The notes beneath the pieces are model-generated. The model saw only the letters and a program-made list of their open reading frames with translations, had not been told where the DNA came from and did no database searches. The position numbers and the translations under genes are program-made. From Selaginella moellendorffii (Eukaryota; Plantae; Lycopodiophyta): a DNA stretch of 64,000 nt. Positions 1-5,799 of the stretch are shown piece by piece; the stretch's first letter is position 1, and every line of letters starts with the position of its first letter. The DNA lies in NCBI RefSeq assembly GCF_000143415.4, contig NW_003314337.1, positions 451,234 to 515,233 of the forward strand, read 5' to 3'.

Positions 1-204
1 ATTGCCAGGATATATCCTTAACCAGCTCTTCTTGCTTTGAAAGTCAGACAACCATTGGGGCCGGTCGGAAGATCTGAGGCAAGAAACGGTAAAAGTTCTT
101 ACCAGAGAACTTGGTTCCTTTTTTTCTTTTCTTTCTGATATCAAAGAGGAGCCAAGCATCCATCGCTTTTGCTGCCTCCAAAAACAAACATAAGATGCTG
201 TAAA

Positions 205-1771
205 TTACGTCAGTTTTAGCTTCTGCAGGCAGACATAGAGATATGTTAAACCAACGGCGAGTCAAACAAAACTGACAGGCATACCTTCATTTTCAAGAGG
301 AGCTCCTTCGCCTTGGAGTTTGCCTTGAAATGATCTCGAATCGGCTGTGACGCATAAAAGCATCTGAGCTACCAAGTGACAGCATATGCATTCAAAAATG
401 TCACGAACCTGCAGTATTTTATTCACTGATTCCGTAAGTGCATTCTTCAAGTCGCCTGGATGAACAGATCCCGCGGAATAATCGCTACTCAAGTCCTCTA
501 CAGACGTGAATGTCCTGTGAGACAAGTTACCAAGCGTGTGAGCGACGCATCAACCACCTTTGTGTCAGGAACAAAATAAAAGAGAACACTTTTTGCGTAC
601 TTAGTTCCCTCATCCGAGCGAGGCTTGATTGTTAGCTCTCGGCACCACGGGAAGACGATGAGCTTCGCCAGATCCATGCAGGGATTTTTCTCTAAAACCT
701 TTTCGGCACAGAAGGCCCCGTTGATTTTCTTCTTCACGTCCTTCTGAAATAAGCAGAAACGTGGAGTTTATTCTCTAGACTTTATGCCTCTGAATACCGA
801 CTGACCTCCTCATCGTCCATAAACAAGCATGAATCTGGGCTGCTCCTTGACATCTCCTTTTGTGCTTCAAGACTCTGCAAACGCTCCAGGCTTGGCAACA
901 TAGCTAAATTCTTTGTAAGTGGCAGAAAACGGAAAAACAATAAAAACTAGATACTTACAATTGGAGAGAAAAACTGGCCTGCGTTCTTTATCAAAATCAT
1001 TGCAATAGTTCCCAATCATGTTAATTACATTGTGTTTATCAGCTCCCAGCAAGCAAATGTGAGCCTAAAGAAATAAGGAGATCCAAACTCGAATGAGTAT
1101 ACACAATCGAGTTAAAAGCTACCTTGGTTAAAAACATGCTTGCGCACTGCATGCATGGGTACAGTAGCTCCGAAGAAGGAATCGTTTCCTCCTCCCAGTT
1201 TTCAGATAGTCCCAAGCAACTAGCAAACAAAAACAATACAATACTTTAGAACGCTGAAAATGACTATAGAAATCCAGACCTTAGAACTCGAGGAAGATCA
1301 CAGCGCCGAGCAACATCCAAGACGAGAGGCCAGTACTCGGCAGTCCTGGGGCCATTGATCACGTCCGAGGCCCAGATAAACTCCACCTGATCGACTTTCA
1401 TGCCGGCAGCTCTCCACACCTCGATCATATACTCTCCCGCGACTCTAAGTTTGGTCTTCTCGTTCTTCACACAGTAGCGCTGCTCCGCGACCCAATCGCC
1501 AATCCAAATCTTCACGGAGCAGCCGGCATCCACGAGCTGATTGACAATCAGCGTCTTCAAAAGCCCCTGGGGAGAGGTTCCACAGCTAAAACTCGCGATC
1601 GAGTGGCAAACAAATGGAAATTTCTACCTGCGCAATTGGCATTCGCTGCCGCGGCTCGAACGAATCGAAGCAGATCGGGCTGGCCTCACGACCGACGATC
1701 GCGCGCAGCCCGTCCTCGTCATCGCAAGAATGCGCGACGCTCCGGATCAAGCGGAAGCGCTCCTCCTCCAT
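205..1771 (-). CDS. Cytosolic-type tyrosyl-tRNA synthetase paralog with degenerate catalytic motifs (multi-exon)
   Basis: Exons read ICFDSFEPRQRMPIAQG, GCSVKIWIGDW, YWPLVLDVARR, LYPCMQCAS, MLPSL..EMSRSSPDSCLFMDDEE, NPCMDLAK and HPGDLKNAL, colinear with plant TyrRS. Introns are GT-AG. ATG at 1771; the last exon encodes KLKLT* (222-205). Confidence 0.88.
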
Positions 1772-1777
1772 CCCCAA

Positions 1778-1786
1778 AAACCCTAG
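1778..1786 (+). promoter_or_regulatory. Telo-box (AAACCCTAG) just upstream of the TyrRS-like ATG
   Basis: Motif aaaccctag lies 6 nt before the ATG. Telo-boxes are typical of translation-related plant genes. Confidence 0.45.
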
Positions 1787-1807
1787 CAGGCAAAGGTAAA
1801 AAGTTTT

Positions 1808-3669
1808 CTACACATTTTCTACTCGTGTTTGCCTATCGGCGGACATCAAAAGCTGGAGCGCTGTGTCGGAGGCGACGTGATGAACTTGGCTACTGCCTCT
1901 CAAAGAAATTACCACCTCCGGTAAAATTGCTCTGTCACTTCGGTGAACTTCGAGCAGTGGAGTGTTCTCCGTCGCTGGCGGATCATTCACTCTCGAGTGA
2001 GCATCGCGCTTGCAAATCGGGCAAAACGATCGTCTCGTCGTGAGCCAGTGATCCACACAAGTTGCGTGGAACTCTGCAAGAGAAAGAGCAAAACTTAAGA
2101 AGCATGAAAGAAAACCATCCGATCTTACCGTGTTGGCAAGGAAGAACTCGCAGCTTCTCGTCCGCGATATAATCTTCCAAGCAAATCGCACACGTCTCGC
2201 TGGAGACGCTGTTTGCCCTGTAGATCAGAGTCGGCAGGAGCTTCAAATCTCGGAGGTTCATTCCGAGAGATTCACGTAGGAAGAGAACTCGCGAGCCGAT
2301 TGTCCTAAGCCTGTATCTCCGGATCAAAAAGAGGAGCAGCGAAGTAACCATGCCGCTCAAAAGTAGCACCAGCGTCGCGGCCAGCAGCGATCGCGCCGAG
2401 CTTTCCATGCTGGGAAGAATGTAGCACGTCGTGCCATTGAGATTGTAGTAACTTAGTAGCGCTTCTCCAGCGGCTTTGGAGACGAAAACAGCGGGAATGC
2501 GAATTCCCTGCGGATCTCCCGACACTGGAAAAATAAAAGGAAATGGAGAAGGAATGAAATCAAAGAGAGCAATCTCATGAGCAAGCTTACTTGTGACCAG
2601 CGAAGGAAAATCTTCAGTGTTGTAAACGATGACCGCGGCATACCCTGCATTTTGCGCGTGAAGCACCTTGTCTTCGAACAAGCACTTCCCTCGAGCAGCA
2701 AGAGCGATTGGAAGAAACGAAGTGTTGTTTGAGAATGGAGGACTGCTCATCGGATCACAACCATCGTGAACAAATTGCAAAACTCCGGAAAGACCACCTT
2801 CCGGAACTCCGGGACCTGAGATCAAAGTCCGTCGTATTTAAGCAATGAATGAAAAAAAAAAACTAGAAGCAAAAAACGTGGATTCGTCACAGGCAAAAAA
2901 ACATAAGTTCCTTGCACACAAAAAAGAAAACCTCGGTAGGCAAACGCAAACACAAAAACCAAAAGCGTGGCAGACAAAAACCATTAAGTTCCTTGCAAAC
3001 ACAACAAGTATATCTCGATCAAGGAATTCATCCAACACGGACGAGAGAAAAACAAATGCACGAGAAAAATCTCCACTCCAACTAAGAACCAAGGAATTTA
3101 ACGATCCTCGCAGGCGAGCTCAATCACCGACTTAACGCAAACAATGGTAGCAAACACACCAACAAAAAAACCAAAAGCGTGGAATCCTCGCAGGCAAAAA
3201 CCAGTAAGTTCCTTGCAAACACAAAAAACATCTCCACAAGGAGAAAGAGAAAAGCACGAAAGGAATTCATCCAACAATGACGAGCTCAATCAATCTGGGG
3301 AAATAAAAAAGGAAGGCACGAGAAAAACCTCCGCTCGAACACAAAAAACCAAGAAATTTAATGATTCTCGCAGGCGAGCTCAACCACCGACTTACAAGCC
3401 TCTTGACTCATTCCAAGGAGGTAAACAAAAACTAGACTTCTCCAAGCCGCCAAGCAGAGCAAGAACCCTAATGTCGATCGCTTACCGAAAGCCGCCTCCA
3501 CGTCCGGGAATGGCAGCGTCTCCTTCCCGGCGGTGATGAGCACGACGAGCGCATTGACCCTTCCCAGCATCAATGTCAACGCGAGCAGCAAGAGCGCGGC
3601 TATGGCGATCGAGAACTCCCGCATTGTCACGGACAAGGCGGCGGCGGAGGAGGAGGACGCCTCGGGCAT
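1808..3669 (-). CDS. RMR: Receptor homology-transmembrane-RING-H2 (PA-TM-RING) protein, vacuolar sorting receptor/E3 ligase
   Basis: Signal peptide, [12 protein letters not shown] domain ([26 protein letters not shown]), TM helix and RING-H2 (CAICLEDY...[21 protein letters not shown]). The start may be 3669 or 3624. Confidence 0.9.
2865..3395. repeat. Imperfect tandem duplication (~260 bp unit) in RMR intron 1
   Basis: ctcgcaggcgagctcaa(t/c)caccgactta occurs at ~3107 and ~3367; taagttccttgca(c/a)ac occurs three times. Confidence 0.7.
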
Positions 3670-4176: not shown

Positions 4177-5799
4177 TTAGTATGGAGGTGACGGAACTGG
4201 GGATTTGTATACTGGCGCTGGCGAGGAGTAAACCGGCGACGGCGATGGACTCTTGTAAACCGGGGATGGGGAGGAGTAGACCGGCGATGGAGATTTGTAA
4301 ACCGGGGATGGGGAAGAGTAGACCGGCGATGGAGATTTGTAGACCGGGGATGGGGAGGAGTAGACTGGCGATGGAGATTTGTAAACCGGGGATGGTGAGG
4401 AGTAAACCGGAGATGGAGATTTGTAAACTGGGGATGGTGAGGAATAGACTGGCGATGGAGACGGGCTTTTATACACTGGCGATGGCGATGAATACACTGG
4501 CGACGGTGATGAATACACTGGCGATGGCGAGGGTGATTTATAGACGGGGGATGGAGCTGGGATCACAACTGGAGCTGGGGACGAGTACACTGGGCTGGGT
4601 GACGGACTCTTGTAGACTGGTGACGGGGATGAGTAGACTGGCGATGGGCTCTTGTACACTGGTGACGGGGAGGAATACACCGGCGACGGGCTCTTGTACA
4701 CTGGTGACGGGGAGGAATACACCGGCGACGGGCTCTTGTACACTGGTGATGGGGAGGAATACACCGGCGACGGACTCTTGTACACTGGTGACGGGGAGGA
4801 GTACACAGGCGACGGGCTCTTGTAGACTGGTGACGGGGACGAGTAGACCGGCGACGGACTCTTGTAGACTGGTGAAGGGGACGAGTATACCGGAGACGGG
4901 CTCTTGTAAACTGGCGAAGGAGACGAGTACACCGGTGACGGGCTCTTGTAGACCGGGGATGGCGAGGAATATACTGGCGATGGAGATGGGCTCTTGTAGA
5001 CTGGAGATGGCGATGAATATACCGGCGATGGGCTCTTGTAGACTGGAGATGGAGATTTGTAAACGGGAGATGGTGAAGAATATACCGGCGATGGGCTCTT
5101 GTAAACTGGTGACGGGCTCTTGTACACCGGCGATGGCGAGGAATACACCGGCGAGGGAGACGGGCTCTTGTACACCGGGGATGGCGAGGAATATACCGGC
5201 GAGGGAGACGGACTCTTGTAGGCTGGGGATGGCGAAGTTACCGGCGCGTCGTAGTAAGTTGCGGGGCGGACTTCGGACAGCCGGCGAGACGTGGGCGAGA
5301 ATTTGGTGCAGAAATCCAGCGGCTGCTCGGGCCTGAAGCTGAAGGGCCCCGTGTACTTGATCCGCGATTGGGTAGTGCCGAGACTATTCCCGCCCAGCTG
5401 AATGAGCTCCTCCTCGGTGTGCGCGGCGATGGCGCAGGCCTCGAGCGGACTGCTAATGACCCTCACGGAGCAAAGCGCGGCGGAGCCGGGCACCGCGACG
5501 CTGAAGAATCCCGCGGCGTTTGTGGTGGCCTCAATGGCGGAGGAGCGATCTTTGCAGTCGACGGCAACTCTGGCACCTACATTGCACAGAAGAGCAGAGA
5601 TTTAGAGCCCGGGAGATCATACGTGATGAAATATACAACCTTGGAGGAAAGAGCTGAACTTGGTGAAGCGGCCCTCGATGCATTGGTCGCAAAAGACTCT
5701 CCCTGCGATGGTGGTCGAGAGCTCATCGGCCGCGAAGGCCGTGAGTAGCATCGAGGCTAAGAGCACCGTCATCGCTGCTACTGCCTTGGAGGAGCCCAT
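4177..5799 (-). CDS. Chimeric hydroxyproline-rich glycoprotein: signal peptide + Pollen Ole e 1 domain + SPSPVYK/SPSPVYS repeat
   Basis: Exon 1 reads MGSSKAVAAM...IAGRVFCDQC; exon 2 contains CSVRVISSP..C and YTGPFSFRP, followed by >40 seven-residue SPSPVY(K/S) units. Confidence 0.9.

What the first reader, a model, noticed from the sequence alone, without database searches (positions are those of the whole stretch)
205..1771. Stand-alone pseudo-TyrRS: catalytic motifs lost, anticodon-binding motifs kept
Seen: an intact spliced ORF colinear with plant cytosolic TyrRS. Against the recalled consensus, the active-site motifs are all altered: YDGFEPSGRMHIAQ>FDSFEPRQRMPIAQ (substrate-binding Tyr and HIGH-like His lost), ADWFAQLN>GDWVAEQR, MQCAD>MQCAS (Tyr-OH-binding Asp lost), QLGMDQ>LLGADK and KMSKS>EMSRS. 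The anticodon-domain motifs A(Y/F)C and HPGDLK are retained. Known: TyrRS is a dimer that binds tRNA across subunits, and trypanosomatid double-length TyrRS is a pseudo-dimer with one catalytically dead, anticodon-binding half. Inference: this may be a separately encoded dead subunit that forms asymmetric heterodimers, or a tRNA-binding regulator.
Basis: partly seen in the sequence, partly recalled or inferred. Interest (0 to 1): 0.75.

Follow-up and report, generated by a model that had tools for sequence, protein, structure and literature searches.

The report
Expressed dead tyrosyl-tRNA synthetase copy, spikemoss
The spikemoss Selaginella moellendorffii transcribes, correctly splices and keeps under purifying selection an extra full-length copy of its cytosolic tyrosine-tRNA charging enzyme. 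The copy's catalytic and acceptor-stem-binding residues are gone but its pocket for the first anticodon base is intact, so it is a pseudo-enzyme, not a decaying pseudogene or a working synthetase.

Summary
A 9-exon, all GT-AG gene on the minus strand (ATG 1771, TAA 207-205) encodes 352 aa. It is identical to RefSeq XP_002986840.2 of Selaginella moellendorffii, which is annotated as an ordinary "tyrosine--tRNA ligase 1, cytoplasmic".

- **Origin:** all 8 introns sit at the same positions and phases as introns 2-9 of the Arabidopsis and Sphagnum cytosolic TyrRS genes. It is therefore a DNA-level duplicate that lost exon 1.
- **Expression:** all 8 splice joints appear in contigs of four RNA-like runs from four studies, and every transcript keeps the in-frame stop.
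- **Selection:** the two genome haplotypes differ at 7 synonymous and 2 non-synonymous sites (pN/pS 0.08, p=0.0005). Introns diverge three times more than exons.
- **Lost residues** (bean TyrRS numbering): Y64F, D201S (tyrosine OH); H74P (HIGH); K253E/K256R plus a 5-aa insert (KMSKS); S70R, G71Q; Q216K; acceptor-arm R174S, R181N, R217H.
- **Kept residues:** the G34 pocket H336-P337-x-D339-x-K341 and C281.
- **Fold:** intact (pLDDT 89, TM 0.92 to bean TyrRS).
- **Relatives:** no ortholog was found elsewhere, and its terminal branch is about 12 times the median.

The mechanism is inferred: a non-catalytic dimer partner or tRNA-Tyr anticodon binder. I could not retrieve the canonical Selaginella TyrRS. 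This scan earlier noted a dead TrpRS copy on other DNA of this genome.

The parts
205..1771 (-). Whole coding gene of the TyrRS-like pseudo-enzyme (9 exons, 352 aa). It equals RefSeq XP_002986840.2 of S. moellendorffii.
   Evidence: Gene model; identity to P0306; splice joints in 4 runs.
1628..1771 (-). Exon 1 (aa 1-48). It corresponds to canonical exon 2; the canonical exon 1 (N-terminal extension) is absent. It holds F35 (was the Tyr that binds the tyrosine OH), S37, R41, Q42, and P45-I-A-Q (1639-1628) in place of H-I-A-Q.
   Evidence: Residue roles come from PMC1934993 and PMC11791061.
1280..1566 (-). Exon 2 (aa 49-144, first Rossmann half). GDWVAEQR lies at 1500-1477. R141 (=R171) is kept and S144 (=R174) is lost.
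   Evidence: Pfam PF00579 hit, E 2.8e-5; PDB alignment to 8zmi.
1123..1219 (-). Exon 3 (CP1 and tyrosine pocket). N151 (=R181) is lost. Y164 and Q168 are kept. MQCAS lies at 1152-1138, with Ser in place of the Asp that binds the tyrosine OH.
   Evidence: PMC1934993.
959..1064 (-). Exon 4. LLGADKH lies at 1052-1032: Q216K (alpha-amino/carbonyl contact) and R217H (contact with C1/A73 and the acceptor arm).
   Evidence: PMC1934993 (Arg193/Gln192 of yeast) and PMC11791061 (R217A nearly abolishes activity).
806..903 (-). Exon 5. It carries a 5-aa insertion in the KMSKS loop, and EMSRS at 856-842 in place of KMSKS.
   Evidence: The exon is 98 nt against 83 nt in Arabidopsis and Sphagnum. This is the lowest-pLDDT block, 58.
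601..743 (-). Exon 6 (start of the C-terminal domain). AFC lies at 716-708 (Y280F, C281 kept). K277N, K278G, P282A and P283E are changed, and there is a 1-aa deletion.
   Evidence: PMC11791061.
409..514 (-). Exon 7. HPGDLK lies at 462-445 and is intact. It corresponds to H336, P337, D339 and K341 of bean TyrRS and to H283/D286 of M. jannaschii, the G34 pocket.
   Evidence: PMC1934993.
285..344 (-). Exon 8 (C-terminal helix).
103..222 (-). Exon 9. It holds the last 5 codons and TAA (207-205), then 3'UTR running down to 103.
   Evidence: Contigs run continuously from 222 to 103 in all four runs.
35..102 (-). A further GT-AG intron inside the 3'UTR, 102 nt after the stop. It is spliced in X2, X6 and X7 and retained in X1.
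   Evidence: Joint 34/103 and record 1 of X1.
1772..1810 (-). A 36-nt spacer plus the TAG stop (1810-1808) of the upstream PA/RING-H2 gene. The TAG is in the same frame as the TyrRS-like ATG, and transcript contigs are continuous across it.
   Evidence: Sequence; gene table of L001; contigs.

Best explanation
This is a living gene for a catalytically dead tyrosyl-tRNA synthetase, that is, a pseudo-enzyme.

Shown:
- It arose by DNA-level duplication of the plant cytosolic TyrRS gene. All 8 introns are at homologous positions and phases. It lost the first exon, which encodes the N-terminal extension.
- It evolved very fast but always in frame.
- It is transcribed, correctly spliced and under strong purifying selection today.
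- The TyrRS fold is intact.
- The residues needed to activate tyrosine are replaced: the Tyr/Asp pair for the tyrosine OH, the His of HIGH, the first Lys of KMSKS, and the Ser/Gly of the ATP loop. Three arginines that hold the tRNA acceptor arm or wobble loop are also replaced.
- The H-P-x-D-x-K element that reads anticodon base G34 is untouched.

Inferred:
- TyrRS works as a dimer in which one tRNA lies across both subunits: the acceptor end on one catalytic domain, the anticodon on the other subunit's C-terminal domain. Only one site is used at a time.
- The pattern of losses fits a subunit that serves only the anticodon-binding side. The most likely mode is a non-catalytic partner in a dimer with the active TyrRS, an unfused counterpart of the dead half of the trypanosomatid double-length TyrRS.
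- A second possible mode is a homodimer that holds tRNA-Tyr without charging it.
For: - **Gene model and identity:**
- **Intron positions:** identical to Arabidopsis and Sphagnum.
- **Expression:** all 8 joints seen in contigs of 4 runs from 4 studies, with the stop included.
- **Haplotype comparison:** 9/1059 exon differences against 13/509 intron differences; 7 synonymous and 2 non-synonymous; pN/pS 0.078; binomial p=0.0005.
- **Neutral simulation:** when the sequence is mutated neutrally to the observed 53% amino-acid divergence, 0 of 2000 runs keep the ORF.
- **Local contrast:** a tandem partial copy of exons 7-9 just downstream has decayed, with out-of-frame indels and a stop.
- **Residue mapping on bean TyrRS 8zmi:**. 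Roles come from PMC1934993 (Tyr43/Asp177 bind the tyrosine OH; Tyr170/Gln174/Gln192 bind the amino group; Arg193 reads C1/A73; the Asp reads G34) and from PMC11791061 (R171A, R174A and R217A each almost abolish activity; K341, P337, Y280 and C281 are in the anticodon-side contact).
- **Fold:** pLDDT 89.4, pTM 0.88; TM 0.92 to 7sc6.
- **Half-of-the-sites and cross-subunit binding:** PMC1934993, PMC11791061.
- **Trypanosomatid precedent:** PMC8319005.
Against: - No binding, dimerisation or activity data exist.
- The anticodon side is not untouched: K277N, K278G, P282A and P283E. The C-terminal domain is only modestly better kept than the catalytic domain (25/36 against 81/151 invariant columns).
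- I could not retrieve the canonical Selaginella TyrRS, so complementary degeneration in a partner is untested.
- No ortholog was found in any other species. Selection is therefore shown only from two haplotypes (9 differences) and from ORF retention.
- Translation is not shown directly. The ATG lies only 36 nt after the stop of the upstream gene, and the contigs cannot give a transcription start.
Confidence: 0.55

Rival explanations
1. It is a selected non-catalytic protein whose function has nothing to do with tRNA. The TyrRS fold would be reused as a small-molecule sensor (the remodelled pocket has lost the OH-specific contacts) or as a protein-binding scaffold.
For: - The pocket changes Y64F and D201S are at the same two positions that are varied in engineered M. 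jannaschii TyrRS to accept other aromatic side chains. Many such variants appear among the PDB hits.
- Y194 and Q198, the amino-group contacts, are kept.
- Part of the anticodon-loop patch is changed.
- The grass degenerate paralogs have lost even the HPGDLK element yet persist.
Against: - The G34 element H-P-G-D-L-K is kept letter for letter in a protein that changed 43% of otherwise invariant columns.
- No ligand or partner is known.
Confidence: 0.25
2. It is still an enzyme. Either it is a TyrRS with unorthodox motifs, or it is a ligase that activates another amino acid such as phenylalanine or a modified tyrosine.
For: - The ORF is under selection.
- The fold is intact.
- E68, D of the ADW motif, Y194 and Q198 are kept.
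- Archaeal and eukaryotic TyrRS already tolerate variant signatures such as HIAQ and KMSSS.
Against: - No histidine is left in the HIGH position (PIAQ).
- The first KMSKS lysine has a charge reversal to Glu, and a 5-aa insert sits in that loop.
- S70R and G71Q fall in the ATP loop, and Q216K is changed.
- R174S and R217H replace residues whose alanine mutants almost abolish activity in bean TyrRS.
Confidence: 0.08
3. It is a transcribed relic: an ordinary duplicate on its way to decay, or a passenger in the 3' part of the upstream RING gene's transcript that is never translated.
For: - Only 36 nt separate it from the upstream gene, and contigs run across both genes.
- It has a very long branch, 2.56 against a median of 0.21.
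- No ortholog is known.
- The 3'UTR intron could make the mRNA a target of nonsense-mediated decay.
Against: - The haplotypes differ at 7 synonymous and 2 non-synonymous sites (p=0.0005), and non-synonymous-site divergence is 10 times below intron divergence.
- 0 of 2000 neutral simulations keep the ORF at this divergence.
- All indels are multiples of 3 and all 16 splice sites are intact.
- The neighbouring partial copy did decay.
- In run X7 the contig covering this gene has 2.3 times the depth of the contig covering the RING gene. This is weak evidence, because the figures are contig means.
Confidence: 0.05
4. It is one half of a longer protein: either a double-length TyrRS whose other half lies outside the window, or a PA/RING-TyrRS fusion made by reading through the in-frame TAG at 1810-1808.
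For: - Plants do have double-length TyrRS, for example At1g28350 and P0002 of 753 aa.
- The upstream stop is in the same frame as the ATG, which has a 1 in 3 chance of happening by accident.
- Contigs are continuous across the spacer.
Against: - Every contig carries exon 9 with TAA 207-205, and there is no alternative joint from exon 8.
- The 9.7 kb downstream on the allelic scaffold holds only a decayed fragment of exons 7-9 and then a CRAL-TRIO gene.
- The upstream TAG is present in both haplotypes.
Confidence: 0.03

Closest known systems
C-terminal pseudo-monomer of the double-length TyrRS of trypanosomatids (Leishmania major 3p0h/3p0j; Larson et al. 2011, as summarised in PMC8319005)
   Same: Both are TyrRS-fold units that have lost class I catalytic residues (KMSKS is replaced) while supplying the anticodon-recognition site. 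This gives an intrinsically asymmetric dimer with one active site. Both are of the same plant/apicomplexan/kinetoplastid TyrRS type (E 5e-81, TM 0.86-0.88).
   Different: - The Selaginella unit is encoded by its own gene and ends at its own stop. It is not fused to an active half.
- It originated independently, from the plant gene, as its intron positions show.
- Its partner and its asymmetry are not demonstrated.
Plant cytosolic TyrRS (Phaseolus vulgaris 7sc6/8zmi; Arabidopsis At2g33840; Sphagnum, Diphasiastrum orthologs)
   Same: - Same fold (TM 0.92).
- Same exon-intron structure for 8 introns.
- 44-48% identity.
- The G34 pocket, C281, R171, Y194 and Q198 are kept.
   Different: - 81 of 187 near-invariant columns are changed.
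- HIGH, KMSKS, the Tyr/Asp OH-binding pair, Q216, R174, R181 and R217 are lost.
- It has no N-terminal extension.
- It has a 5-aa insert in the KMSKS loop.
- Its terminal branch is about 12 times the median.
Double-length plant TyrRS (At1g28350; P0002, 753 aa)
   Same: It is another duplication product of the plant cytosolic TyrRS.
   Different: There both halves are fused and both keep HIGH and KMSKS-like motifs (PMC9437257). Here there is a single, unfused, degenerate unit.
Degenerate TyrRS paralogs of grasses (rice Os08g0191800 = LOC_Os08g09260; Triticum/Aegilops XP_048547275; Lolium; Sorghum SORBI_3004G240600)
   Same: They are stand-alone, full-length TyrRS paralogs annotated as ordinary TyrRS. 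They have lost the His of HIGH and the OH-binding Asp, and most have no KMSKS.
   Different: - They have independent origins. They group with each other or stand alone in the tree, not with the Selaginella copy, and their best hits are monocot enzymes.
- The Triticeae and Sorghum clade has also lost HPGDLK.
- I did not test them for expression or selection.
Dead TrpRS paralog of the same genome
   Same: As described in those notes, it is from the same organism and the same class Ic dimeric synthetase family, and shows the same pattern: catalytic site destroyed, anticodon side kept, expressed and spliced.
   Different: It is a different gene family on other DNA. I did not check it here.

Membership tests
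Class Ic tyrosyl-tRNA synthetase, archaeal/eukaryotic type (Pfam PF00579 tRNA-synt_1b) | Homologous Rossmann-fold catalytic domain plus a C-terminal anticodon-binding domain | tested here: met
   - PF00579 hits on exons 2, 3 and 7.
- E 1e-105 to bean TyrRS over residues 3-351.
- AF2 pLDDT 89.4.
- TM 0.92 to 7sc6.
Class Ic tyrosyl-tRNA synthetase, archaeal/eukaryotic type (Pfam PF00579 tRNA-synt_1b) | HIGH signature (H-I-A-Q in the plant type; the His is invariant) | tested here: not met
   The sequence is P-I-A-Q, i.e. H74P. The column is at least 97% conserved in 157 canonical plant enzymes.
Class Ic tyrosyl-tRNA synthetase, archaeal/eukaryotic type (Pfam PF00579 tRNA-synt_1b) | KMSKS signature | tested here: not met
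   The sequence is E-M-S-R-S (K253E, K256R), and a 5-aa insertion lies just before it.
Class Ic tyrosyl-tRNA synthetase, archaeal/eukaryotic type (Pfam PF00579 tRNA-synt_1b) | Tyr and Asp that hydrogen-bond the tyrosine hydroxyl (yeast Tyr43/Asp177) | tested here: not met
   Y64F and D201S. Roles come from PMC1934993.
Class Ic tyrosyl-tRNA synthetase, archaeal/eukaryotic type (Pfam PF00579 tRNA-synt_1b) | Tyr/Gln/Gln that bind the alpha-amino group (yeast Tyr170/Gln174/Gln192) | tested here: inconclusive
   Y194 and Q198 are kept, and Q216K is changed.
Class Ic tyrosyl-tRNA synthetase, archaeal/eukaryotic type (Pfam PF00579 tRNA-synt_1b) | Arginines that hold the acceptor arm, C1-G72 and A73 (bean R171, R174, R217; yeast Arg193) | tested here: not met
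   R171 is kept. R174S and R217H are changed, as is wobble-loop R181N. Mutant data are in PMC11791061.
Class Ic tyrosyl-tRNA synthetase, archaeal/eukaryotic type (Pfam PF00579 tRNA-synt_1b) | G34-recognising element (M. jannaschii His283/Asp286; bean H336-P337-x-D339-x-K341) | tested here: met
   HPGDLK at residues 310-315 is intact. Roles come from PMC1934993.
Class Ic tyrosyl-tRNA synthetase, archaeal/eukaryotic type (Pfam PF00579 tRNA-synt_1b) | Tyrosine activation and tRNA-Tyr charging | not testable with these tools
   This needs ATP-PPi exchange and aminoacylation assays.
Asymmetric TyrRS pseudo-dimer (trypanosomatid type) | Two TyrRS units fused in one double-length chain | tested here: not met
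   The stop at 207-205 is present in all transcript contigs. No second half lies downstream.
Asymmetric TyrRS pseudo-dimer (trypanosomatid type) | One unit has lost its catalytic residues but kept anticodon recognition | tested here: met
   PMC8319005 for the comparison.
Asymmetric TyrRS pseudo-dimer (trypanosomatid type) | A partner unit that is catalytically active, with which it forms the dimer | not tested
   The canonical S. moellendorffii TyrRS did not appear in the lists. No complex prediction was available.
Decaying (unitary or duplicated) pseudogene | Disrupted frame or splice sites, no selection on protein sequence | tested here: not met
   - The ORF is intact and all 16 splice sites are GT-AG.
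- pN/pS is 0.078, p=0.0005.
- 0 of 2000 neutral simulations keep the ORF.

The most novel reading that the evidence does not exclude
Selaginella may run its class Ic synthetases as obligate asymmetric heterodimers made from two genes. One gene would encode an active subunit. The other would encode a dead subunit that contributes only the anticodon-binding side. This would be an unfused equivalent of the trypanosomatid TyrRS pseudo-dimer, and it would apply to TyrRS (this gene) and, according to earlier unchecked notes of this scan, to TrpRS as well. Independent degenerate TyrRS paralogs in grasses would then mark a recurrent way of regulating or specialising tRNA-Tyr charging in plants.
Probability: 0.2. 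Interest if true: 0.8.

Novelty: new variant of a known kind. Interest (0 to 1): 0.55.

Why it matters
Catalytically dead synthetase relatives are known as truncated paralogs, splice variants, or the fused dead half of the trypanosomatid TyrRS. In the literature I could search, I found no description of a full-length, separately encoded, selectively maintained dead TyrRS. Databases label this protein, and the similar grass proteins, as ordinary cytosolic TyrRS. That will mislead counts of functional synthetase genes and evolutionary-rate studies. One such study simply trimmed the 'poorly aligned' part of the rice copy (PMC10098043).

TyrRS binds one tRNA across its two subunits and uses one site at a time. 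A dead subunit that keeps only the anticodon pocket is therefore a natural experiment on half-of-the-sites activity. It may also be a regulator of tRNA-Tyr availability. The gene is small, expressed and easy to test with standard assays.

Tried and rejected
- **Canonical Selaginella TyrRS.** I tried to retrieve it to date the duplication and to look for complementary loss in the partner. Searches with the pseudo-copy and with the Diphasiastrum enzyme listed only the best 120 of hundreds to thousands of plant TyrRS, and it was not among them. tblastn found no other TyrRS in the 64-kb window or in L001.
- **Region-limited search.** A search on the pseudo-specific part (residues 138-240) found only the protein itself. 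So there is no close ortholog in that database, but coverage of other Selaginella species is unknown.
- **Phylogeny.** The careful search did not finish, and the quick tree leaves the copy unplaced on a 2.56 branch next to the outgroup, with a long-branch warning. I draw no conclusion on the age of the duplication.
- **Papers not held.** Larson 2011 and Barros-Alvarez 2017 could not be read. I used reviews and Tsunoda 2007 instead.
- **Double-length reading.** Rejected.
- **HGT or retrocopy origin.** Rejected by the conserved intron positions.
- **Domain-wise dN/dS across orthologs.** It could not be done because no orthologs were found.
- **Transcription start.** The contigs cannot give it, so independence from the upstream RING gene is unresolved.
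Full report
**What is there.** Reading the minus strand of 1-1900 and assembling exons by their GT-AG borders gives a 9-exon gene. The exons are 1771-1628, 1566-1280, 1219-1123, 1064-959, 903-806, 743-601, 514-409, 344-285 and 222-205. The CDS is 1059 nt and the protein 352 aa, with the TAA stop at 207-205.

The protein is identical to P0306 = RefSeq XP_002986840.2, "tyrosine--tRNA ligase 1, cytoplasmic" of Selaginella moellendorffii. The older GenBank models (EFJ29361 and EFJ12170, 359 aa) read into intron 8 and have a wrong C-terminus.

**It is a TyrRS homolog with an intact fold.**
- Pfam PF00579 hits exons 2, 3 and 7.
- The whole protein matches bean (Phaseolus vulgaris) TyrRS 8zmi/7sc6 at E 1e-105 over residues 3-351.
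- An AlphaFold2 model built with 40 homologs has mean pLDDT 89.4 and pTM 0.88. The weakest block (58) is at the KMSKS loop.
- The model superposes on 7sc6 with TM 0.92.

**Origin.** I mapped the exons of the Arabidopsis (L002) and Sphagnum (L003) cytosolic TyrRS genes.
- Their exons 2-10 measure 154 or 148, 284, 97, 106, 83, 146, 106, 60 and 21 nt.
- The Selaginella gene's exons measure 144, 287, 97, 106, 98, 143, 106, 60 and 18 nt.
- In a three-way protein alignment, all 8 introns fall in the same columns with the same phases.

The gene is therefore a DNA-level duplicate of the plant cytosolic TyrRS gene, not a retrocopy or a foreign gene. It lacks canonical exon 1, which encodes the N-terminal extension. 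All length changes are multiples of three: +1 aa, +5 aa in the KMSKS loop, -1 aa and -1 aa.

**Expression and splicing.** Twenty public runs hold 23-52% of the sampled words of window 150-1900. That share is about what exons alone would give. I laid contigs of four runs from four studies on 1-2300. All eight introns appear as CT..AC joints at the predicted borders in all four runs.

Exon 9 runs on from 222 to 103 in every run, so the TAA is part of the mature RNA. No alternative joint leaves exon 8. The runs are labelled only "RNA?", but contigs that lack all the introns are spliced RNA.

A further intron (102-35) lies in the 3'UTR. It is spliced in three runs and retained in one.

Upstream, contigs run without a break into the PA/RING-H2 gene. 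Its TAG (1810-1808) lies 36 nt before the ATG and in the same frame. Contigs cannot show a transcription start. In run X7 the contigs break at a SNP (1832), and there the TyrRS-like part has 2.3 times the mean depth of the RING part. This is a weak hint of an independent promoter.

**Selection.** L001 (GL377577.1) is the other haplotype, 97-98% identical to the window.

| Comparison between haplotypes | Result |
|---|---|
| Exon differences | 9 of 1059 nt |
| Intron differences | 13 of 509 nt |
| Flank differences | 18 of 744 nt |
| Synonymous / non-synonymous exon differences | 7 / 2 (V90A, F333L) |
| pS / pN | 0.031 / 0.0024 |
| pN/pS | 0.078 |
| Binomial p | 0.0005 |
| Non-synonymous sites vs introns, Fisher p | 0.00014 |

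A third allele seen in RNA adds I157L. The ratio is as low as the dN/dS of working plant synthetases (0.08-0.34 in PMC10098043).

Random substitution of the CDS up to the observed 53% amino-acid divergence gave a mean of 9.7 stops, and no intact ORF in 2000 runs.

There is a built-in contrast about 440 nt beyond the window's start, on L001 12150-12560. It is a tandem partial copy of intron 6 through exon 9. It is about 80% identical where alignable, but has 24-, 21-, 11- and 10-nt indels and an in-frame stop. That is what decay looks like at this locus.

**Which residues are lost and which are kept.** The alignment to 8zmi reproduces the numbering used in PMC11791061.

| Function | Bean TyrRS residue(s) | State in the Selaginella copy |
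|---|---|---|
| Tyrosine OH contacts (yeast Tyr43/Asp177, PMC1934993) | Y64, D201 | Y64F, D201S |
| ATP contacts | S70, G71, E68 | S70R, G71Q; E68 kept |
| HIGH | H74 | H74P |
| KMSKS | K253, K256 | K253E, K256R, with a 5-aa insert just before |
| Alpha-amino contacts (yeast Tyr170/Gln174/Gln192) | Y194, Q198, Q216 | Y194 and Q198 kept; Q216K |
| Acceptor arm (R171A, R174A and R217A each almost abolish activity; yeast Arg193 reads C1 and A73) | R171, R174, R217 | R171 kept; R174S, R217H |
| Wobble loop | R181 | R181N |
| Anticodon side, G34 pocket (M. jannaschii His283/Asp286) | H336, P337, D339, K341, C281 | all kept |
| Anticodon side, other | Y280, K277, K278, P282, P283 | Y280F (yeast has Phe here); K277N, K278G, P282A, P283E |

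Against 157 canonical plant enzymes, 187 columns are at least 97% conserved. The copy keeps 106 of them: 25/36 in the C-terminal domain and 81/151 in the catalytic domain.

**Relatives.**
- Apart from its own cluster (two haplotypes plus the RefSeq model), the best hits in 5.8 billion clusters are canonical plant TyrRS at 43-48% identity.
- Canonical land-plant enzymes are 70-78% identical to one another.
- A search restricted to residues 138-240 found only the protein itself.
- In a quick ML tree its terminal branch is 2.56 against a median of 0.21, and its position is unresolved, with a long-branch warning.
- The canonical Selaginella TyrRS was not in any list I could obtain. Its existence is inferred from the need for cytosolic Tyr-tRNA.

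**Mechanism.** TyrRS is a dimer. [quoted passage not shown] In solution only one site per dimer is used (PMC1934993; PMC11791061).

The Selaginella copy has lost what subunit 1 needs, namely catalysis and the acceptor-arm arginines. It has kept the base-specific part of what subunit 2 needs. This is the pattern of the dead C-terminal half of the trypanosomatid double-length TyrRS (PMC8319005), except that here the unit is encoded separately.

I therefore favour a non-catalytic dimer subunit or tRNA-Tyr anticodon holder. My confidence is about 0.9 that it is a selected, catalytically dead protein, and about 0.4 for the dimer/tRNA mode itself. Binding, dimerisation and inactivity are all inferred. 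The rivals are listed with their odds in the Rival explanations section.

**Known or new.** Reviews list the fused trypanosomatid pseudo-dimer and the Arabidopsis double-length TyrRS, in which both halves are intact (PMC9437257; PMC7564348). They list no stand-alone dead TyrRS. Text searches for such a protein found nothing.

Earlier notes of this scan describe a dead TrpRS copy, and a TrpRS copy lacking anticodon elements, elsewhere in this genome. I did not check them. They make a class Ic-wide pattern worth testing.

**In passing.** Grasses carry at least two lineages of similarly degenerate TyrRS paralogs, all annotated as normal TyrRS.

Noticed in passing
Proteins P0269 (rice Os08g0191800 / LOC_Os08g09260), P0028 (Triticum/Aegilops), P0080 (Lolium/Festuca), P0123, P0148, P0135 (Sorghum SORBI_3004G240600): Grasses carry full-length TyrRS paralogs with degenerate active sites. 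Examples: HIAQ becomes TIAQ, DITQ or TIAE; MQCAD becomes MQCAG or MQVAA; KMSKS is absent in the Triticeae/Lolium/Sorghum clade. That clade has also lost HPGDLK, whereas rice keeps HPADVK. All are annotated as ordinary cytosolic TyrRS. They do not group with the Selaginella copy, so dead TyrRS copies arose several times in plants. I did not test their expression or selection.
   Followed up: partly
L001:12150-12560 (allelic scaffold, about 440-790 nt beyond window position 1, same strand as the gene): A decayed tandem partial duplicate of intron 6 through exon 9 of the TyrRS-like gene, with out-of-frame indels and a stop. Its exon-7-like piece keeps a working acceptor site. It is spliced to an upstream exon (donor at L001 12113) in RNA contigs, which explains the loose ends at window 428 and 484 and the extra depth at 386-539.
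   Followed up: partly
window:1772-1810 and 1983-2825 (minus strand): The upstream PA-domain/RING-H2 gene ends with TAG at 1810-1808. This is only 36 nt before the TyrRS-like ATG and in the same reading frame. Transcript contigs are continuous across both genes, so overlapping transcripts, a bicistronic RNA or rare readthrough cannot be told apart from contigs. The sequence after the TAG (AAA ACT) does not look like the usual plant readthrough context.
   Followed up: no
window:35-102 (minus strand): A GT-AG intron in the 3'UTR, 102 nt downstream of the stop codon. It is spliced in three runs and retained in one. An exon junction that far after the stop could expose the mRNA to nonsense-mediated decay and so regulate its level.
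   Followed up: no
window:23: Contigs of X1 carry an 8-nt insertion (CCTCACAT) behind position 23. Loose ends in X6 and X7 at position 24 show the same variant. This is an indel polymorphism in the 3'UTR.
   Followed up: no
window ~4200-5250 (L001:6420-7470): blastn of the window against the allelic scaffold gave several off-diagonal matches of 77-81% identity over 750-1036 nt. This indicates an internal tandem repeat region inside or near the gene called at L001 5873-7492.
   Followed up: no
GenBank EFJ29361.1 / EFJ12170.1 (P0001, P0307): The original JGI gene models miss intron 8 and end in 12 residues translated from the intron (359 aa). The RefSeq model of 352 aa agrees with the RNA joints.
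   Followed up: yes
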